From Ylistrum balloti (taxonomy: Eukaryota), in contig NW_026782472.1 of the NCBI RefSeq assembly GCF_031769215.1, positions 62,001-126,000 of the forward strand: DNA of 64,000 nt, read 5' to 3'. Below are positions 42,915 to 54,900 of the stretch, piece by piece. Numbering within the stretch: the stretch's first letter is position 1; every line of letters starts with the position of its first letter. The position numbers and the translations under genes are program-made. The notes under the pieces were generated by a model. It saw only the letters and a list, made by a program, of their open reading frames with translations, did not search any database and had not been told where the DNA came from.

Positions 42915-45900
42915 ATGTCTTGTGTTGGTAGAAAGGTAAGTCCGTTTGTCACGCACACTGACCTTTGTCGTGGTAAGAGTAGTGTAATTTGTTATGGTGG
43001 GTAAGATACACAGATAGGATTACTTAGAAAAGAAATGGTTCACGTTTCAGTCATGTAATAATAGGATATAAATTTACATGTTTTTGTTTCTTTTTATATA
43101 CATTTTATTACTGACACAGATGCACATGGCGCGCCAAACTAACTAGAAACATACTTATTTCTATTTGGCACAAACCATTGGTACAAACTTAATATTGCTT
43201 GATATGCATACAATGTAACATACCGTCCAATGAATTATTGTGGTTATGAAGTAAACAACCTTTTTCTGTATTATTTCTCTTTAATGATATTCTGATTCTC
43301 GCCGATATATAATGTGTGAACCTTGAAGCACTTACAGAGAGTACAAGTTTTATGGAACTGCACTGGCGTATATTTTATACATATTCTGGTTTAATTGCTC
43401 CACCAGTTTATTACTATTGTGTCACGTAATAAACTCGGTCCTATCTCACGGCTATAGAGTTAACATTGGCAGACATCCCTGATACCAAACTACACCCAAA
43501 CCCATAAAACGTCATATTTTTATTACAATAACAAGGATATATTGAGTAATAATCAAACAATATTCTTCCCCAAAATACTTACGCTCACTTTTCTAACCAA
43601 TTGTCTAGTTCTCAAGTATGTAAATAAACACTTTTTATGTTCAAAAATTTACAAGATAGAAGTGAAAGATAATATTTCATATTTCATTATTACGTAATGT
43701 ATCAGCCACTCAAATTCAAATGTTGATAATCAGGACATGAAATACACAAACATAAACATTACAAGCTACAGTTGAAAGAATTATCAAATTTGGTTTTTTT
43801 CGTTTATTGTGTAACACTAACATGATTGCAAACAAATTGCATACCATAAAACACCATAAAACCTGTTTATTGGAAGGAGTGTTACTATTTTCGAACCACC
43901 GAAACTACTCAAAAATTAAAAAAAAAATCCCTAAAAACTAACAAAATCGTTTTCAATATACAAAACACTTTCATCTTAAAATAACCATTTTCAAAATATC
44001 AACACATTCTGACATCATCGAATCCAAACTACCGAACTATATATTTTTTTAGATACATCAAACTATATTCCGTCATCAAATGTAAAGTTTTCCAACAGTT
44101 TGACATCATTTCTTAGACATCATAAACTACCCACAAATCACATTTCAAAACAGTCTGGCATCGTTATCGTCTTTAGACAACACAATCTTCGCAAATATCT
44201 CCATTTCAAATTTTTCATAACAATCTGATTTCAATTTTCCTCCTCTGAGTTTTCCATTTCTTGATTGAAATACCCCTGCATCCCCAACCTATGGTGTTAA
44301 CATGACACAGTTGATTCAATATTCAACGGCCTGTTCCCAATATCACGATTTTCGCGCAAAATGTCGACATATGACAAAGTCACAACAAGGTTTCCATAGA
44401 TGCAGGATAATGAGAATTCTGGACAAGAAATAGCCGCCATAGCGATGTTATAGATATTTTTTCGGTAAGAAGCTTGATGTTATTTTGCATATTGGTTCCG
44501 TTCTTGTTTGCCGTGTTCTCATTCGGGAACGTGTCAGAACTTAAGTGAATTAACTAATATTCAACAGTTACAGGCGGATGTCATCGATGAAGCAGAAGAC
44601 GCTTACCCTTCCAGGACAATGACAATATTCTCCTGTTATTTTTTAGGAGTCTACGTGTAGATTTTTGTGCTCATGTTTTGCCCAAATTTTATTGGATTTG
44701 AATTTTGAATACGATTCCATTAACATGTCAATATTTTCTTAATTGTTTCTGCTACCGCACAATTACCTGTATCCTTAATGTTGCCCAAATGTAAACTGAA
44801 ACCTGATTTGTTTTGTTGTTACGCCACATGGACCTGTTGTTCGATCATTTCCTTGTTTGATACTAAGACATGTCACAATAATATTACCCGCCAAACATAA
44901 ATAATTATGAAATTGGTTTTTACACAAACCGAACAACTAACAGTATTAAAATATTTGCTATATAATAATACGAACAAGCCGTAATCAATAAGATGAGTTC
45001 TTGATTCTTGAATATGGGGCCTACGTGTGGAATCCCTGTCTGCAATAAGACATAAATGAGATGGCAAATGTACAGAGAAGAGCAACGAAACAAATTCCGG
45101 GAATGAAAGATCTAAGCTATGAGAGCAGTCTAAGGATTCTTAAATTACCGACACTGAGGCACAGAAGATTAGGAGGAAATATGATTCAAGTATACAAGCT
45201 AACACATGGAGGATATGATAGGGCTGTCGCTGAGGATTTCCTGATTCAAAACAATGACAAGATAACAAGAGGGCACAGTCTTCTACTATCAAAAAGAAGA
45301 GGCAGACTTAATCTGAGAAAGTATTCTTTCTGCGAACGGGTAGTGAACCACTGCAATTCACTTCCTAATGCCGTTTTAACGTCACTAACAATCCAAACTT
45401 TCGAATCCCGATTGGATAAACATTGGGGGCAAACTGAATGTGTTTATAATCATGAACTGGACAATAACACACTGATCCATATCCGGGATGTTAATCCTTT
45501 TTAATTCTGATCTGGATATATCGGCTTCATAAGCCTGCGTCCAGTATATATTATTTTTATTATTTATACATGTTATACATGCCAGTTCAAAATGTTAAAA
45601 GTGAAGTCATGGTTATCTATCTCATTTCATCTTGTAAAGTTACATTTTATTTAAAATTAGGAAATGTTAAATAAATATAGTATTGATACTCCTTTGTAGT
45701 TTTACAATGTTTTGAAATATACCTAACATTCATCATGACAATAAAAGTATATTTTACACTATGGCTACACCATCGTGCGTGGTCGCCATCTAATATGAAA
45801 TACCAACACAGTATGTGTTCACTATTTAACATCTGAGTCCTGATGAGAACATGTATTGATAAATGCGGGTCTCATGTCGGCGCCTCTAACAACATAACTT

Positions 45901-48900
45901 TTCTGTGGAAATCAGACACGGACAATGTTAATGTCAAATGAAAACGTCACGACCACCCGGATGTAGTGACAAACACGTGCGGCTTTAGCCGTGAATTAGA
46001 TATCCCCTTTACAAAGATGGCCACTTAAAATATGGTAATGGGTTTCACACTTCACATTCGTCTAGTGTGATTAACATGTCAGCGTTACATACACACCGAG
46101 AGGATGACGGACTGATTAGAGGAAAGATTTCGATGGAATCTAACCACGCCCACGTCTTAAAAGAACATATTACGCATGTATTATTCTACACCTGAATACA
46201 TCTGTCATATCACTGAATAGTGTGATGTTCTCTCAGAAAGTATAAACGATATTACAGAGATTAACATCATCCAATCTGCAAATGCTAATGCCAAATCCGC
46301 ACTATTATTTAGATGTTTTTTTTTTATTTGAAATATTCTTAAAATTGCAGACTCATCTGGTCGGAAAAAATGTAATGAATGGGATAAATGTACTGTTAAA
46401 ATATTTTTGAAATAATTCAAGGTTGACATATTAGCTATCACCGCCTTTACAGAGTAAACACTTTCTACATCATCCCATTTGGTTAATTCAGGGCGCGTAA
46501 TAACACAATGTATTCTATACCATGAGTTCCAATTATCTATTACAAATTAACTATACTAAGGTCTGATTCTCGTTACCAACAAAGTAAATTACATATGAAT
46601 TCATTGTAATAATTCATTATCTATATCATCAATATTAATACCAAATAAACCAGTTAAAAAATAACATCTTCCTATTGGGTTTTGTAGTACCTAACATGTC
46701 AACCTATTTTTGTTTATATAGTATCAGATGGTTTTATGCTATATATGACATATCCCGATTCCACCCTAGTAGTTTCCTTACGACATACATGATCTTACCT
46801 TTTATCACATACTCCGCTTGTTATCCAGTGAATGATACCATGCATTATCATTAGATATATATCTTTAGTGTAATATACCTTAGAACGATTTTCATTGGTT
46901 GCAGACAGTCTGCAAGCAATTGTGAATGTGATTGGAGCAACAATATGGCTGCCGCCACTTGCTTTTGTCCTCCATATTTAGCCTTTAAACCCCGTCACAA
47001 TGTATCTTTTTAAAAAAATATAATATGAAAAAATATCTTAAATTTGTTTTTATTCCATGTGAGATACCATGACAACTCGTCTTGAAGTTTGAAGAACTTT
47101 GAATTTTTGTACTTCTTAGATTCGTTTTTGTAAAATCTCAAATGAAAAAAATAATAGATTTTTATTATGCAGCATACTTTCGATAGTCGTTATTACCCTG
47201 TACCTTTGCAAGGGCTTTGATGTATTATTTGTTCAATTTTCATCGTCGTTACGGTGATGTTTGGTTGTTTTTGTCTTAATGGAGAGTTAAAGACTGTCAC
47301 CTGTCTCTTTAAGGTTTTTGCTGAGGCAATAGGAGGTTCCAGATGGGTGTGTTTATTGCTCCTATTGTATAGCAAGGTAAGGTCCCTCACTTCCGGGATA
47401 TAGAGAATAAACTTGACACATTCAGAAACTTTGTACATTGTAGGATATCGTAGCTATATACTTTCATCACATAAGATAACGCACGCGTGTAATACCCATA
47501 TCCATGTCTGTTGATAATCAACAATTAGTTTCAACTGACGAATCTATGGGCGACTCCATCGATTATACTTAGTAAATTGACAGATTAAGAAATGTCTTGA
47601 CTGCTTCCTGTCGCGTAATGATCACGTCATGTAAAATCTACCATATTCTACATATAAATAAGACAGTCAGTGCCTGTGTTTGCCACGAGATAATTATTAC
47701 CTATTTTATTCTTATATAACTGCTAGTGGAAAGCACATTTTTTTTAAAGATGTTGCATATTAGAAGACAATTACAAAATATTTAGAAAATTCAAACCATG
47801 ATAATAAATGTAATTCAATGCAGTTTTGAACAAAATACTGTTTGTGATATCGCTAGTATTGCAGGTTAGTATTAAAGATTTTGTTTTTGTAACAGACTAT
47901 TTGTGCAGTGACACGGACACAGCAAGGTAAGTATGGATCGGCGATTTCATCTTAAACTGTCTGACCCTATCTGTATGATATATTGTCATATATAAAATCC
48001 CATATATACTCAACAAAAAAAAGAAAGGTTAACATGTTTACTTGGCGAATACCTGTAAAGGAGTGAAAACAAAATGACGTTTGTGCAATATTAGAAAATG
48101 GTAATGTTTTACATTACAAATCCAAGGGGGTTACCAAAATCATTCAAGCGTGAAAGTCTGTATTAGCGAAAGAGCTGCACGAGGTTTTCTGCGACTAACT
48201 TGTATCTTCGCTTGAATTTCATAAACATTCAAACTGACAACTGTTCCTTAGATCGTAAGGACTTAGAAATCACCGAATCTTGCTATCTATCAACTTTATC
48301 ATTATGCCCCGGCTGTCACAAGTACAGAGAGAAAGGGCTGTAGGCATGATCCAGGCTGGGGAGTCTCGCCGTCGAGTTGCACGGCATTTTAGTTGAATTG
48401 TTAAGACAATTTGCCAGTTGGTAAGTCGTTTAAACCAAACTGGGTCAACATCCGATCGTACCCGAAGCGGCCGACCCCGTAAAACGACCGCCAGGGATGC
48501 CCGTCGTATACGATTGATACACTTGCGCAATCGATTCGTAACCGCAGTAGAGACTACAAGGACATTGTTTGGGCGTCGTGTGTCTCCCCAAACAGTCCAA
48601 AACAGGTTGAGGGCCTACCAATTGAAAGCGCGGCGTCCTTACACTGGACCCAATTTGTTGCGATGTCACCGTAATAATCGGCGTAACTAAACCCGTGTTC
48701 ACCGTCGTTGGGACTTACGACAATGGAACAATATTCTGTTTTCAGATGAGTCCAGGTTTTGTCTGCAACACGGTAACGGAAGGCGCAGAGTGTGGAGGCG
48801 ACGAGAGGAGCGTTTTGCGAACTGCTGCGTCGCAGAACGGGACCGCTTTGGCGGCGGAAGTGTAATGGTTTGGGGTGGTATTTGTGGGGAGACTCGTACC

Positions 48901-51900
48901 AGGCTTGTTGTGTTAAATGGCAATTTAAACGGCATACGATATCGGGACGAAATTATAAGACCAGTGGTTCTGCCATTCTTAAGACGCCATGGCGTTGGCG
49001 CCATTTTTCAACAGGATAACGCCCCAGCGGACACCAGTCGCGTCAGCAGAACTTTCTTGCAGCAGAATAACATACAGGTGTTAGATTGGCCATCTAAATC
49101 ACCTGATTTGTCACCGATTGAGCATGTCTGGGACGTTCTTGGGCGACGCGTGAGTTAACGTCAAAATCAGCCGTCAAACTTGCAGGAGCTTGCCCAGGCC
49201 TTGATCGCTGAATTTCAATGCTGCAATGCTGTTTACTTCGCAAACGGTGGCCATACCCGTTACTAATGGTGTTACCTTTGAAATTGACCCCAACATCCTT
49301 TACAGTCGAATAAAATCAACTGAACGCAAAGTTTTATAATGTTTTTATCAGAATTGATCAATTACTTTATTCGTACATGATTGGTAAGGATTTATGAAGG
49401 GGTTAATTAATTAATCACAGAATAAAGTAGTGTTACCTTTCTTTTTTTGTTTAGTATATATGCATGGCGAGTATGTACATAGGTACTGATGTCGTTATAT
49501 TAATCGCTTCAGAAAATGTCCTATTTTCTTTCAAGTTTTGGTTCGGACATGTTTCATACGGCTTAGAAGACCTCGTGGTTCCGTTGATGTTTACAATGTT
49601 ATAATTTGGGGATATGGCATTACCAACTCGGATTGACTATGGCTTACAATGCGGTTGTCATCAATGAACCAGAAGACGATTACTCTTGCGGAACCTCTAG
49701 TCTTTTTATTATTGTACTTTTTCAGGGTCTCGGTGTAAATCTTTTGTTTGCTCATATTTTGCCCTAGTTTTATTGATTATCGTGTTGGGTTTGGCCCTAG
49801 TTTCATCGAATTTGTGTTTGCATTAACACTCGGAAGCAATGTCAGTATTTTCTTTGTTTTAACAGAGGTAATCTATTTTCTTACCATTGTCACGTTCACA
49901 AAAGTTTTGTTTCTGATTCACCAATTAGTGCAGCGTTGAGTTTTTTTTTTATCTACAAGAACTTGACCTTTCATATCTGCACATCAACTAACCCAGATAC
50001 GGTGTTTGATCCTTCCTTTACTCAATCATTTAGCGTCATCGGTTTTCTTTCCCTCATTCAAATTAGATCAAATTTTTGAATGATTTGAAAAAAATAATAC
50101 TTAAAAATGTCAAAATGATTAAGTTTGTTTCAAGTTGAATATGTTAGTTTTGTAAACACTTGTGAACGTGTTAGGTAACTAATATTTTTTCAGTCTGTAT
50201 AAATGTATTGCTGTTTGTGGTTAGGAACTAACCTTATACGAATCTCTTGAATCAAAAATGATGATTCGATAATCCATCAACATACAATGAATTTAATAGA
50301 ATGATTTTAACACCAGCAATTCACAGTGAAAATGCTTAGTAATCGTTCTTAGCATCATTTACATAAAATCTGGAAAAGCACGAATGTCCCTGTTTTGCTA
50401 CTAGGAATAGTGGAGGTCGTAATGTTCAGTGATTACAAGGACAGATTTGATGCACTCGAAACATGTTATATACGAATTTACAGTAAAGCAGAATTATGGT
50501 TGTTACAGCATTGCTGTCAATTGAAAATGTTACAGCCACGTTCCTGTGTTTCGGTAACGACACGGACAGTAGCCTGCTTGAGTTCACGTTCCGGGTCCTC
50601 GCCAATAGTGACTCAGTTTTAGATATCGTGCCTTATGATGCTAGTTCATCCTCCCTTGGTGTGGGTAAGAAAACCGGATGTACCACAGTCCAAGGGAACG
50701 GTACAACTCTCAGCCCCTTCGAGTTGACCATCACAGTGGACACTGATGACCCGACATCTATCATAAATTTGTCCAATACATGCGGAGTTCAAGAAGTATG
50801 TTTGTAATTTTTGTATTTCTTGATGATAGACTTAGATCAGATACTGATGTCGCGAATGAAGTAATCAATGCTTATACATGTTTTGTTGTGTTAGTGCGTC
50901 ACTTGATAATCATAACCATAACTACATTGTATGGTTGTGGGTAAAAAGTATCTTACATGCTTCTTCGTCACTGCATTAACTAAATGTTCCATAAACATAT
51001 AGGAAAGTAAATAAATACATTAAATGAACAAAGAAGCGTAATAAAAATGCATGTTATCCTAAAGTTATGTTTTTACTTGATATTCTTCCCACAATCATCG
51101 CCAGTTAATCTATTTAGATAACGGCTGGGGTGATATATAAGTTCCGACTACGGACAATTGGTGACCTCGAACTTGACCTGGGAACAGATGCTTATTACGA
51201 CTGTCAATGTGATATGACCAACCTTCTAAGAGGCTGGCAAACCGTTGGTCCCGCTTTCATTGTGTATGTGCGTTTTAATTATCCTTAATAAAAATATTTA
51301 TCATTTTAGACTTGTATCTAAGAAGATATTGCAAATAAAAAAAAAGTCTCACAAAAGAGGGACTGTCGGTTACAAATATAATCGAATCATTTGGTTAATA
51401 TGTTTGTATAAAAACGAATAAAGCTGATGCTTTCGTCGTATTGCTGTCAATATAATGATGTTAACACATCATTTACATAAAATGCATTTTAGCTCTCAAG
51501 TGTTTGTTTCGCAGCGGGATGACTTCAATGACGTTGCAGGAAGTCCAGATAGGGACTGAACTGAGACTAGTGGACATGACCACAGACCTCCCTGTCACTG
51601 TCGTTGAGCTTGGTGCAGAGGTCTACCTCCAGGTGGTTTACAACCCTCAGACTTCGGACAGTAACGGTACAATCTTATCCTACGAGAATACAAATTTTTA
51701 AACTAATCATTTGGCCTATTCCGATCTTGATTCGTTTTGTTTGGTAATGTTAGTGTGTGGTAATGACCAATTCTTATTTTGACCGTTGCAGCGTATGACT
51801 CCTGTGGAACATCGTTTTGGGTAGCATTTGATCTTAAGTCTCCGAGTGCGTCACGATCGCATGAATTATATATTATTAGCGCAAATTCACTGAAGTCAAA

Positions 51901-54900
51901 GGTCTCTTTCTGGAACACTAGCACGAGTCAGGTAATGGAGTCCATCACGGTGGACGCATTGTCAGCAGTAAGTGTATCTCTTTCTGCTAGCGCTGCAGGA
52001 ACTCCTGTGCACGTTACGTCGACAGAGAAAATTTATATCATGGCGTACAGTTCCGGGCCGGAAAGTAGGTCACTACAAATAATTTACCCTTCGGATACAC
52101 TAGGATACGTGTACCATTTGGTATCTTCCGATGTTAATAATTTTGCGATAGTAATTGCCACAGAAGATCAGACTTCAGTCAACATTACATCAACATATTT
52201 CTCTATGTCCATTGATGGCATTACAATAACGGCAGGAGACACAGCAAATCGTAACTTGCAAGCTTTCGAAATTTTGCAGATCAATAGTAGTATAAACCTG
52301 AGGGGCAGCGTAATCTCAGCGTCCAAACCTGTGTCGGTCTTTACAGGGTTTGAAAATCAAAACAAATTTGGAATTCAACAATTACTGAGTAGGGAAAAGA
52401 TGGGAACAGCCTTTGTACTACCTGTTGGGACAGGTGTGGTTAAATGTGTCGCTTCTCAGTCGGGCACAACTACTGTGCGGTTTGTATCAAGCTTATCGGG
52501 GTCTTTAGATAACTCTACTCAGCTTAACCAGTATGAACAAGTAACGTTGAATGCAGAAAGTGAACATTTTATTGAACTGAAAGCTGATGGAGCAGTGACG
52601 TGTCTAAAGTATTACGGAGAAGACACTATAGCTTTGATACCGCCTCTTCAACAATGGTCGACCTCTTATACTTTGAATGTTAACAATACCGACATCGGAT
52701 TTTCATCTGTGTATATCGTGACCACGAATGGAACTGAAACTGGTTTAAGAATAAATCAAGAGATGTTTACAGCTCCCACAACAGCAGTTTACCATCTTCA
52801 CTCAGGTAAAAGTTCTGACGAAGATTCAGGGCATGTTCGTTTTCAGTAATTGTTAAACAGGTAATGTGTTAAAGTATTGGAAATAAACATATACTATTAA
52901 GAAGAGTAAGAAACCAAACATCGAAATAATTCAGTCAAATTGTGATCAATTAAGGAATCCTAGGTATTCAACTCAAACGAAATACAAAAATGATGATTGC
53001 ATTGTTTCCCCTGAATACCATATTTCATACGTTTGTCAAAAATGCCTTTCCATTTTTTCATACTGATAACATACTCATGATATAATCGTGTATCCTTGGA
53101 CTGCCTATTGATAGTTTTGTTCTATTCCTCAATACATATTTAGAACTTGTATAAAGATATTTCGTCAGCGTATTTACTTAGTACCCCCTCCCCGCTTTCG
53201 TTCTGATCATTTGGTTATTACGCTACAAACATTATGATATTCTAGAATAAGACTCATGTCATTTTGTATGAATTCTTTGCGTCTCTAGGCTCGGACGCTA
53301 TCGACTTGATATCGATGATTGTCAGACTTCCATCAGATGTAAAGCTGCCTGTGACATTATCCCATCCGTCTCAGCCTTTCCTGGCCCTATTAGTACTAGA
53401 TAATGGCACTGACAAAGTTGCCGCCACAGCCCTCCCAGGGATTCACATTGCAGACCTGTTCGTCAATAGTGATGTAAGGCACAAGACATAAAACGTGTAG
53501 CCACCAGTGGTAATGTTTTTAAGACCATTTGATTCAAATTGATGTAAGCATGTAGACGTTATCGAACAGTATGTCCTACCCACTCTTCTGTTGTTTCCTT
53601 TTTATTTTACTGAGAATTTTAAAACGAATTTCAATTGGATCGACTACACCGGGTTTTTAAAGTTCATTATTAGTTTACTCGTTTGTTACTTTTACAATAT
53701 CGTCAGTGTGTGGTTTTGATGCCAGTTATAACTATGACGTATGTTCGTTTTATTTTCTCTAGCCTTCATGTGTCAAGACATCCGGGCACAGAGGAGATTT
53801 GGTAGATAATGACTGTGATGGTTGGGTGGATGAAGATACCGATTTAGATACTGGTGAATATCAACAACAATTAACGGAAAGATACTTGCAACAAGAGAAT
53901 ACATATCATAAATGAATGGCGGTTTATTGTTTAATATGGTACCTTTGTTTCTGATTATAACAATAAGAATAGCATCATCATGATTCTGCTAAATGTAGTA
54001 AATACTCTACAAACTAACGTAATAATTAAGTGCTATAATATTTTGAGTTCTTTTTCCAGATAATTTCTTCCCTGATTTGCCGGCCACTCTAATTGGTAAT
54101 ATAGCTTAATTTAGCTAAATAATTTACATTCAACATTGAAACACAAAGCTAAATACAAAGGAAGACAATAATGATTTCTATGCCATTGTTCACATCACAG
54201 ATACAGTTTTATCATTGATGTTTTTACAGCATCCAAATGTAAATTCACTCATTTATTTCTGAGAATTCACCAAGAAAGAATGTTCGCGTTGTGTCGATTT
54301 TGCATCAAGTACTGATCCTATGGAGTGACATTTTAAAAGGATATTATACTTGATTAAACTATATTCTCAAATGCTAGGATTATCGAAGAACACCTGTTTG
54401 CTCTGATGTAGATAATCTTCATCCGGTACGGGTGAGACCTAGGGATTGTGTTGCCAAGCCTAACAAAGCCTGGGATGACGGAGGCATAGCAAAGATGGTC
54501 ATTCTCGAATCGGGGTATTTAACGTCGCCATTGATTACATGAGTTTTGAATTCATTTTCATTTCACATAAACTTCGATGAATTTCTATGAATAAACGTTC
54601 TCTATTCATATTAATCGCTACAATAGTCAGGTGATAAAAAGTAATCCATTTTCACATTGTTTAGATGCTTACCTACCGGGAATGACGCATCGCCGTTCAC
54701 TCCGTCTTCAACATTTAACCTGACCAGTGACACTACCAAATTTCCAGCTGTTTATAATACCGGAAGTTTCTACATGCCTCGATATGAAAACAAAGCCGAT
54801 GTGTACCTTAGATGTAGATTGGATTTATGCTTTCGATTAGATGACACATCATGTACAACGGTATTATGGTTATTATATATATATATCTTATCAATTAAAA

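What the first reader, a model, noticed from the sequence alone, without database searches (positions are those of the whole stretch)
51792..53853. IgGFc-binding + DNDCDG module inserted inside the ZP-C domain via a symmetric phase-1 exon block
Seen: in gene F the exon carrying the first ZP-C strands (…LGDLVRFKF…, phase-1 end) is followed directly by the next ZP-C exon (ESIDVLGVQLKNLIC…DNG). In gene E the homologous exons (…LGAEVYLQV… and DNLHPVRVRPRDC…ESG) are separated by three extra exons of 1014, 185 and 91 nt. These total 1290 nt (430 codons), start and end in phase 1, and encode an FCGBP-N-terminal-like domain plus GDLVDNDCDGWVDED. Established: ZP modules polymerise into extracellular filaments after furin cleavage, and extra domains usually lie N-terminal to the ZP module, not within ZP-C. 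Inference: exon shuffling placed a mucosal/adhesion-type domain and a probable metal-binding motif into a ZP-C loop. The block can be skipped in frame, so one gene could make plain and decorated ZP subunits.
Basis: partly seen in the sequence, partly recalled or inferred. Interest (0 to 1): 0.8.

Follow-up and report, generated by a model that had tools for sequence, protein, structure and literature searches.

The report
Mucus-type domain nested inside ZP-C
A scallop-like gene for a filament-forming zona pellucida (ZP) protein carries a 442-residue FCGBP-type domain spliced into a loop of its ZP-C half; the layout is conserved in scallops, mussels and two unidentified lineages, sits in databases only as "uncharacterized protein", and I found no paper describing it.

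Summary
The three exons exist exactly as described, with AG/GT sites and the stated phases. They lie between two ZP-C exons of an intact plus-strand ZP gene. Exon 1 is a clear IgGFc_binding (PF17517) domain (E 6.8e-25).

Two corrections:
The block is therefore 1326 nt (442 codons), and the expected junctions are 53853^54060 and 54095^54412, not 53853^54412.
- The DNDCDG motif is not a separate metal-binding add-on. It is the normal C-terminal exon of this module in many invertebrate proteins.

The same exon plan and phases occur in annotated orthologues from Argopecten, Mizuhopecten and Mytilus, and in two unannotated, unidentified lineages. dN/dS is 0.06-0.21 across the gene, insert included. 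The neighbouring paralogue (gene F) has one phase-1 intron at the same spot and no insert. Bivalve genes without a ZP module encode the module as a phase-1-to-phase-1 unit. Exon shuffling into a ZP-C loop is therefore well supported.

No RNA data were available. In-frame skipping remains possible, but every annotated copy keeps the insert. My structure model was confident only for the insert, so whether ZP-C folds around it rests on Pfam and ESM Atlas matches. Verdict: real, conserved and undescribed in the papers searched; function unknown.

The parts
47314..47376 (+). Gene E coding exon, 63 nt (signal-peptide region, VFAEAIGGSRWVCLLLLLYSK). The 21-nt first coding exon was not located.
   Evidence: AG/GT sites and a match to residues 8-28 of the orthologues.
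47896..47926 (+). Gene E coding exon, 31 nt (TICAVTRTQQ), ends in phase 1.
   Evidence: Same length as in the orthologues.
50536..50795 (+). ZP-N exon, 260 nt.
   Evidence: Family profile E 7e-42. Same length as in Argopecten and Mizuhopecten. The ESM Atlas model of the orthologue matches ZP/cuticlin clusters.
51118..51263 (+). End of ZP-N plus interdomain linker, 146 nt, ends in phase 2.
51515..51666 (+). Linker end plus the first ZP-C strands (ELRLVD..., VELGAEVYLQVVY), 152 nt, ends in phase 1. This is the last exon before the insert.
   Evidence: Strands predicted there in the AF2 model. The homologous exon in gene F is aligned.
51792..52805 (+). Insert exon 1, 1014 nt, phase 1 to 1: main body of the IgGFc_binding (FCGBP_N) module.
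   Evidence: Pfam PF17517 E 6.8e-25. dN/dS 0.18-0.19. pLDDT above 90 in the orthologue model.
53289..53473 (+). Insert exon 2, 185 nt, phase 1 to 0: rest of the module body. In genes without a ZP module it is fused with exon 1 into one exon.
53763..53853 (+). Insert exon 3, 91 nt, phase 0 to 1: PSC...GDLVDNDCDGWVDED, the conserved C-terminal exon of the module.
   Evidence: 93% identical to Mizuhopecten.
54060..54095 (+). Insert exon 4, a 36-nt microexon, phase 1 to 1 (DNFFPDLPATLI).
   Evidence: AG at 54058-59 and GT at 54096-97. 36/36/42-nt counterparts in three annotated orthologues. Included in the stop-free joined frame.
54412..54514 (+). ZP-C exon resuming after the insert (DNLHPVRVRPRDCVAKPN...), 103 nt, phase 1 to 2.
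   Evidence: In the orthologues the Pfam ZP-C match starts here at profile position 46-49.
54665..54860 (+). ZP-C exon, 196 nt.
   Evidence: Pfam ZP-C profile positions 85-133, E 0.007 for this exon alone. Family profile E 7e-28.
55106..55220 (+). Exon with the furin-type site RKRR (55121-55132) and the strand AVIGLHVTVI (55157-55186), read as the external hydrophobic patch.
   Evidence: Sequence read. RRRR, RTRR and RRKR sit at the same place in the orthologues.
55776..55927 (+). Last coding exon: transmembrane helix (about 55820-55888), short tail and stop codon.
58514..60988 (-). Gene F, a tail-to-tail ZP paralogue without the insert. Exons: 60988-60768, 60494-60352, 59934-59789, 59097-59001, 58700-58514. 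It has a single phase-1 intron where gene E holds the module.
   Evidence: Gene E (insert removed) against F scores 115, versus 36.6 +/- 6 for shuffled sequences. The E-family profile hits F at E 3.4e-16 in two pieces, profile positions 40-211 and 649-738.

Best explanation
Gene E (about 47.3-55.9 kb, plus strand) encodes a membrane-anchored precursor with a ZP module. In order it has a signal peptide, ZP-N, the linker, the first two ZP-C strands, a nested module of about 442 residues, the remaining ZP-C strands, an RKRR furin-type site, a hydrophobic strand and a transmembrane helix. The nested module is an FCGBP_N (IgGFc_binding) body, its own DNDCDG-containing C-terminal exon and a 12-residue linker microexon.

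The module entered a pre-existing phase-1 intron in the loop between ZP-C strands B and C by exon shuffling, before scallops and mussels diverged, and has been kept under purifying selection since.

Shown:
- the exon structure;
- the identity of the domains;
- conservation of the architecture and intron phases in at least four divergent lineages;
- selective constraint on the insert.

Inferred, by analogy with uromodulin and ZP3:
- after furin cleavage the ZP halves polymerise into filaments;
- the nested all-beta module projects from each ZP-C as a side arm that offers a binding or adhesive surface in a mucus-like, egg-coat or other apical matrix;
- inclusion of the insert is the default splice form.
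For: Exons, splice sites and frame.

Domains:
- Pfam IgGFc_binding E 6.8e-25.
- ZP-C above Pfam's cut-off in the Mytilus orthologues (30.2, 27.8 and 27.4 bits against 24.6), starting at profile position 49 directly after the insert.
- ESM Atlas model of the Mizuhopecten orthologue: residues 668-810 match ten ZP-C clusters (TM 0.59-0.64), and residues 30-226 match ZP/cuticlin clusters up to residue 222-226.

Orthologues with the same architecture: Argopecten XP_069126247, Mizuhopecten XP_021378865, Mytilus californianus XP_052097510, and M. trossulus, M. edulis and M. galloprovincialis entries. These come from several annotation efforts.

Exon plan: identical across the annotated models, 152|~1000|185|91|36|103 nt with phase-1 borders. 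Two further unannotated lineages (L008, L010/L011) carry colinear ZP and module exons with the same phases.

Single origin: the modules of all these genes fall in one clade with 98/96 support.

Constraint: dN/dS is 0.06-0.21 in every part of the gene.

Shuffling:
- Paralogue F lacks the insert at a phase-1 intron.
- Genes without a ZP module encode the module as a phase-1-to-phase-1 unit, a large exon followed by a DNDCDG exon.
Against: - No transcript evidence for this genome. No RNA run holds the stretch, and the one holder is genomic DNA.
- The Logan contigs of Mytilus are also genomic, so inclusion rests on gene models and conservation.
- The AF2 model is confident only for the module. The ZP parts have pLDDT below 50, so folding of ZP-C around the insert is not shown.
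- The pre-insert exon alone gets no Pfam hit.
- For the scallop proteins the ZP-C Pfam score is below the cut-off: 16.9-20.7 bits against 24.6.
- Polymerisation, localisation and ligand are untested.
- The function of FCGBP_N itself is unknown.
Confidence: 0.75

Rival explanations
1. The four exons are a regulated cassette. The gene makes both a plain ZP subunit (junction 51666^54412) and a decorated one, so that the density of side arms on a filament can be tuned.
For: The whole block is symmetric (phase 1 to phase 1). So are exon 1 alone and the microexon alone, so skipping keeps the frame. The insert-less protein aligns end to end with paralogue F.
Against: No insert-less isoform was found among database proteins of 132-420 aa. 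All annotated Mytilus copies retain the insert. Phase symmetry is the general signature of shuffled extracellular modules and is seen equally in genes without a ZP module, so it does not by itself point to alternative splicing. No RNA was available.
Confidence: 0.15
2. The insert lies in the ZP-N/ZP-C interdomain linker rather than inside the ZP-C fold. On this reading the exon before it is linker, not strands A and B of ZP-C.
For: The pre-insert exon has no Pfam hit of its own. My AF2 model is unreliable there.
Against: The Pfam ZP-C match after the insert begins only at profile position 46-49 of 133, so about 45 profile positions must lie before it. The pre-insert exon carries two predicted strands. 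It also has the '...LG.EVY.QV' pattern, which aligns with gene F, where it runs uninterrupted into the 'C.P' strand. ESM Atlas matches to ZP proteins extend to residues 222-226, the insert boundary.
Confidence: 0.1
3. The module exons belong to an independent gene nested in an intron of the ZP gene, and the gene predictors merged the two.
For: No direct transcript evidence is available here.
Against: Exon 1 opens only 25 nt upstream of its AG, with no ATG or signal peptide. Both borders match the host frame. The arrangement, borders and phases are kept in at least four lineages. The junction residues are conserved between scallops and mussels. Different annotation pipelines give the same model.
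Confidence: 0.03

Closest known systems
Uromodulin, ZP3 and other canonical ZP-module precursors
   Same: ZP-N plus ZP-C, followed by a furin-type site, a hydrophobic strand and a membrane anchor. The part after the insert matches ZP-C in Pfam and matches uromodulin-like, ZPD, DMBT1, CUZD1 and ZP2 clusters structurally.
   Different: In known ZP proteins the extra domains (EGF, D8C, trefoil, CUB, VWD, PAN) lie N-terminal to the module. Here a 442-residue module sits inside ZP-C. I found no description of such an insertion in the papers searched.
The ZP-C subdomain of ZP3
   Same: It is an elaboration within or attached to ZP-C that is thought to contribute a recognition surface. It is mentioned in PMC7737619.
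   Different: [quoted passage not shown] It is not an independently mobile multi-subdomain module in the B-C loop.
FCGBP and other proteins carrying the FCGBP_N (IgGFc_binding, PF17517) domain
   Same: The same Pfam domain. The same module exon plan and DNDCDG exon as in bivalve proteins that combine FCGBP_N with TSP1/LDLa domains.
   Different: FCGBP_N is N-terminal in the large majority of proteins and is combined with VWD-C8-TIL units in vertebrates (PMC4948705). Here it is internal, nested in another domain, with no VWD. This gene is not an FCGBP orthologue.
Alpha-tectorin and the molluscan EGF-ZP shell matrix proteins
   Same: Matrix or mucus-type domains combined with a ZP module by domain shuffling (PMC4948705; PMC9290575 listed).
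   Different: Those proteins are tandem arrangements, with the extra domains upstream of an intact ZP module. They are not nested.

Membership tests
ZP module proteins | ZP-C domain recognised by the Pfam PF00100 profile | tested here: inconclusive
   The window exon 54657-54869 alone scores 16.9 bits against a cut-off of 24.6. The scallop orthologues score 19.4-20.7 bits, below the cut-off. The Mytilus orthologues score 27.4-30.2 bits, above it. All matches cover only profile positions 46-133, as expected for a split domain.
ZP module proteins | ZP-C fold | tested here: met
   In the ESM Atlas model of the Mizuhopecten orthologue, residues 668-810 match ten ZP-C clusters with TM 0.59-0.64 and 110-127 aligned residues. 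My own AF2 model was uninformative for this part.
ZP module proteins | ZP-N domain with four conserved cysteines upstream of ZP-C | tested here: inconclusive
   Four cysteines are conserved across the family (C43, C87, C121 and C156 of the Mizuhopecten protein). There is no Pfam ZP-N hit. Atlas structural matches to CUT_N/ZP-N clusters reach only TM 0.44-0.53.
ZP module proteins | Consensus furin cleavage site, external hydrophobic patch and C-terminal membrane anchor | tested here: met
   RKRR at 55121-55132, AVIGLHVTVI at 55157-55186 and a hydrophobic helix at about 55820-55888. The basic site and the helix are also present in the orthologues.
ZP module proteins | Polymerisation into filaments after cleavage | not testable with these tools
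   Needs expression and electron microscopy.
FCGBP_N / IgGFc_binding domain (PF17517) | Profile match above Pfam's gathering score | tested here: met
   88.4 bits against 25.6, E 6.8e-25, profile positions 4-254 of 297.
FCGBP (the vertebrate mucus protein) orthologue | N-terminal FCGBP_N followed by repeated VWD-C8-TIL units | tested here: not met
   No VWD, C8 or TIL domain appears in the gene or its orthologues. The domain is internal. The defining architecture is taken from PMC4948705.
MopE-type putative metal-binding motif (PF11617) | Profile match above the gathering score | tested here: not met
   18.7 bits against 27 for the window exon. The Mytilus orthologues score 13.1-14.4 bits. Metal binding itself cannot be tested here.
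Class 1-1 shuffled extracellular module | Module bounded by phase-1 introns both in the host gene and in unrelated genes, with the host paralogue carrying a phase-1 intron at the insertion point | tested here: met
   Host genes. Genes without a ZP module, P0129 and P0035. Paralogue F.

The most novel reading that the evidence does not exclude
ZP-C can host a large independently folding module in its B-C loop and still polymerise. In addition, the symmetric exon block, or its symmetric sub-blocks, would be alternatively skipped, so that one locus supplies both bare and arm-bearing subunits. That would let the animal tune the adhesive or recognition valency of a ZP filament, for example in an egg coat or a mucus matrix.
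Probability: 0.12. Interest if true: 0.8.

Novelty: new variant of a known kind. Interest (0 to 1): 0.55.

Why it matters
ZP modules build egg coats, the tectorial membrane, urinary uromodulin filaments and invertebrate apical matrices. Their accessory domains are described as N-terminal add-ons.

A 442-residue domain nested in a ZP-C loop, conserved under purifying selection in lineages as far apart as scallops and mussels, points to three things:
- That loop tolerates a large insertion. This would be a natural guide for engineering decorated ZP filaments.
- It is an unusually clean, datable example of exon shuffling into a phase-1 intron inside a domain.
- It places the enigmatic FCGBP_N module on a probable polymer scaffold, which offers a tractable setting for finding what the module binds.

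Limits: there is no expression, localisation or functional evidence. The proteins already sit in public databases as uncharacterized entries.

Tried and rejected
- RNA evidence. Laying its contigs showed that they cover the introns, so it is DNA. No junction test was possible.
- Logan members of the Mytilus cluster. They looked like possible transcripts (2-3.6 kb contigs) but contain introns.
- AF2 on the Mizuhopecten orthologue with a 58-row alignment. The insert came out at pLDDT above 90, but the ZP parts were below 50, so it could not show ZP-C closing around the insert.
- Foldseek with that whole model gave meaningless hits, TM about 0.08.
- VIA-align found only generic beta-sandwich and cupin-like subdomain matches, Z 8-11. 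No solved structure matches the whole module.
- PDB sequence search with the family profile gave only uromodulin ZP-C at E 0.78.
- A deeper alignment that added exons from the new lineages and from gene F. The short exons were misplaced, so I ran no further search on it.
- Pfam on the isolated pre-insert exon: no hit.
- Earlier findings of this scan: nothing at this place.
- A cysteine count, to look for a disulfide clamping the base of the insert. The scallop insert has five conserved cysteines and C229 is specific to this family. The counts differ in Mytilus, so I draw no conclusion.
- Spliced proteins of the window could not be handed to Pfam, AF2 or the database searches, because they have no reference. 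I used the orthologues as proxies instead.


Full report
**What is in the window**

The window is AT-rich (35.6% GC, no N) and is animal DNA with GT-AG introns. Each follows a pyrimidine tract and AG and is followed by GT. They join in frame to 51515-51666 upstream (which ends one base into a codon) and to 54412-54514 downstream. A 360-codon open frame at this base composition has a chance probability of about 4e-12 (my arithmetic, using the composition). Pfam assigns exon 1 to IgGFc_binding (PF17517; E 6.8e-25, 88.4 bits against a cut-off of 25.6). The 30 residues of exon 3 get a sub-threshold match to the MopE-type motif PF11617 (18.7 bits against 27). No other copy of the module lies in the window.

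**The host gene**

I reconstructed the host gene from the sequence and from orthologues. Its coding exons are:
- 47314-47376 and 47896-47926: signal-peptide region. The 21-nt first coding exon was not found.
- 50536-50795 and 51118-51263: ZP-N and linker.
- 51515-51666: first ZP-C strands.
- The insert.
- 54412-54514 and 54665-54860: remaining ZP-C strands.
- 55106-55220: RKRR site followed by AVIGLHVTVI.
- 55776-55927: transmembrane helix and stop.

Joined, 765 codons from ZP-N to the end of exon 55106-55220 (just past the furin site) are free of stops. This is the standard layout of a ZP-module precursor.

**Correction 1: a fourth insert exon**

The orthologous proteins contain 12-14 residues between the DNDCDG exon and the resumed ZP-C. 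In the window these residues are encoded by 54060-54095 (DNFFPDLPATLI). AG sits at 54058-59 and GT at 54096-97. The exon is 36 nt and runs phase 1 to phase 1. The gene models of Argopecten, Mizuhopecten and Mytilus californianus have 36-, 36- and 42-nt exons at this place. The insert is therefore four exons, 1326 nt, 442 codons.

**Correction 2: the DNDCDG motif belongs to the module**

- D.DCDG...E occurs in 21 of the 129 proteins retrieved with the module, roughly 100 residues after the Pfam domain.
- I mapped two bivalve genes that have no ZP module: a Mytilus trossulus TSP1/LDLa protein and a Potamilus protein. In both, each module is one large exon (1130-1232 nt, phase 1 to 0) followed by an 88-106-nt exon that begins 'xC', contains DNDCDG and runs phase 0 to 1.
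- Gene E keeps this plan, with one extra intron (1014|185). Its 91-nt exon is the counterpart of that second exon.
- The metal-binding reading therefore rests only on a sub-threshold Pfam match.

**Relatives with the same architecture**

A full scan of the 1.84-billion-protein representative library with exon 1 gave 127 hits.
- The best hit (E 9e-90) is an 852-aa Argopecten irradians protein, XP_069126247.
- A Pecten maximus fragment and an 814-aa Mytilus californianus protein also have the module at an internal offset of about 205-225 residues.
- Word searches added Mizuhopecten yessoensis XP_021378865 (857 aa) and proteins of M. trossulus, M. edulis and M. galloprovincialis.
- All are named 'uncharacterized', 'ZP-C domain-containing' or 'IgGFc-binding protein N-terminal domain-containing'. 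A search for their identifiers found no paper.

The window matches none of them exactly: it is 62-93% identical per exon to Mizuhopecten. It therefore comes from another scallop-like bivalve. Among the 129 retrieved proteins, only this family has ZP flanks.

**Exon structure across species**

An exact splice mapping of three annotated proteins onto their genomic loci gives the same plan in scallops and Mytilus: 152/155 | 1017/1023/981 | 185/188 | 91/82 | 36/42 | 103/97 nt. Phase-1 introns lie on both sides of the block.

A tree of the module places all ZP-nested copies in one clade of ten rows (support 98/96). The clade also contains four unnamed open-frame products from short public contigs. 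I fetched three of those contigs.
- Two carry colinear ZP-N exons, the pre-insert ZP-C exon, the module, the DNDCDG exon and post-insert ZP-C exons. They are an ENA assembly contig and two Logan contigs of one lineage, organisms unknown to me.
- The junctions are again in phase 1.
- The third contig (L009, 1.5 kb) is too short to show flanks.
- The fourth product (P0005) sits on a 2.0-kb contig that I did not fetch.

The architecture thus exists in at least four divergent lineages and looks like a single ancient acquisition.

**Constraint**

Between the window and Mizuhopecten or Argopecten, dN/dS is as follows:

| Region | dN/dS |
|---|---|
| Main module exon | 0.18-0.19 |
| Remaining insert exons | 0.06-0.13 |
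| ZP parts | 0.13-0.21 |

dS is near saturation, but dN is clearly much lower than dS. The module body is the fastest-evolving part at the protein level (64% identity to Mizuhopecten, against about 80% for the ZP-N end). A second haplotype in the one DNA run differs at 15 sites in the insert exons (6 synonymous, 9 non-synonymous) and keeps the frame.

**Is the insert inside ZP-C?**

- Pfam's ZP-C profile (133 positions) matches the orthologues only from position 46-49 onward, starting right after the insert. The Mytilus proteins score above the cut-off and the scallop proteins below it.
- A weak PDB hit (E 0.78) aligns the same stretch to the 'C.ATP' strand region of uromodulin ZP-C.
- The ESM Atlas holds a model of the Mizuhopecten protein. 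Residues 668-810 match ten ZP-C clusters at TM 0.59-0.64. Residues 30-226 match ZP/cuticlin clusters with alignments running up to residues 222-226, the insert boundary.
- Gene F is the tail-to-tail neighbour, and this neighbour arrangement is conserved in Mizuhopecten and Argopecten. F is a distant paralogue. Gene E with the insert removed aligns to F with a score of 115, against 36.6 +/- 6 for shuffled sequences. The E-family profile hits F at E 3.4e-16 in two pieces, profile positions 40-211 and 649-738, which break at the insert.
- F has the same intron positions and phases as E, with a single phase-1 intron where E holds the module.

Taken together, the insertion point is the loop between the 'LG..VY.QV' strand and the 'C..P' strand. 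By my knowledge of ZP-C topology these are strands B and C. The uromodulin filament paper places a key inter-subunit contact at the ZP-C E-F loop (PMC7737619). In an immunoglobulin-like sandwich the B-C loop lies at the opposite end, which would make an insertion there tolerable. That last step is my inference.

My AF2 model could not test it. The module came out at pLDDT above 90, but the ZP parts were below 50. Fold searches with that model showed only generic beta-sandwich and cupin-like subdomains and no solved structure for the whole module.

**Alternative splicing**

The block is symmetric. So are exon 1 alone and the microexon alone, so several in-frame skips are possible. I found no evidence that any of them occurs.
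- No RNA run holds the stretch.
- The only holder is genomic DNA.
- The Mytilus Logan contigs are genomic.
- A search with the N-terminal 240 residues among proteins of 132-420 aa returned only the truncated Pecten model.
- All Mytilus copies keep the insert.

Phase symmetry is equally a property of the module in unrelated genes, so it cannot be read as a sign of regulated skipping.

**Literature**

- Lang et al. 2016 (PMC4948705) define FCGBP_N. They state that it is N-terminal in the large majority of proteins and occurs in varied invertebrate architectures. They do not mention any combination with a ZP module.
- Searches for domain insertion in ZP-C, and a 2026 review of ZP evolution, mention only tandem shuffling with trefoil, EGF or LDL-receptor domains.
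- Within the library searched, the nested architecture is undescribed. The proteins themselves are already deposited.

**Verdict**

The exon-shuffling interpretation is well supported by comparative exon structure. The separate metal-binding motif is not supported. The plain-versus-decorated isoform idea is untested. I rate this a new variant of a known kind (a ZP-module protein with a nested domain). It is of moderate to good interest to specialists in ZP modules and domain evolution, limited by the lack of expression and functional data.

Noticed in passing
window 48259-49155 (+): Tc1/mariner-like transposase reading frames, broken across several frames (for example ...DNAPADTSRVSRTFLQQNNIQVLDWPSKSPDLSPIEHVWD...). 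They lie in the intron between gene E exons 47896-47926 and 50536-50795 and look like a decayed DNA transposon.
   Followed up: no
window 45049-45501 (+): A 151-codon open frame resembling the C-terminal part of a non-LTR retrotransposon reverse transcriptase (...RRATKQIPGMKDLSYESSLRILKLPTLRHRRLGGNMIQVYKL...). It lies upstream of gene E's signal-peptide exons, possibly in its first intron.
   Followed up: no
window 56861-60988 (-): Gene F is a distant ZP-module paralogue of gene E, arranged tail to tail with it. It has the same intron positions and phases but no insert. Pfam finds nothing on its single exons. A minus-strand neighbour of 397-401 aa is also annotated next to the Argopecten and Mizuhopecten orthologues, so the pair is syntenic.
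   Followed up: partly
window 51400-55400 compared with run X1: The one public DNA run that holds this stretch differs at about 1% of sites. It also carries a 30-nt insertion after 53196 (in an intron) and small indels at 54274 and 54874. Nine of the 15 differences in the insert exons change an amino acid.
   Followed up: partly
L008 12439-15408 (-): In the unidentified ENA lineage, a 989-residue open frame lies on the opposite strand inside the intron between the second module exon and the DNDCDG exon. It is probably a retroelement.
   Followed up: no
proteins P0002-P0004: After the bivalve ZP family, the next-best matches to the module are giant amphibian proteins (axolotl 7017 aa, a caecilian 3045 aa, a newt 4438 aa) carrying 6-16 tandem copies of the module. 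All are annotated as uncharacterized.
   Followed up: no
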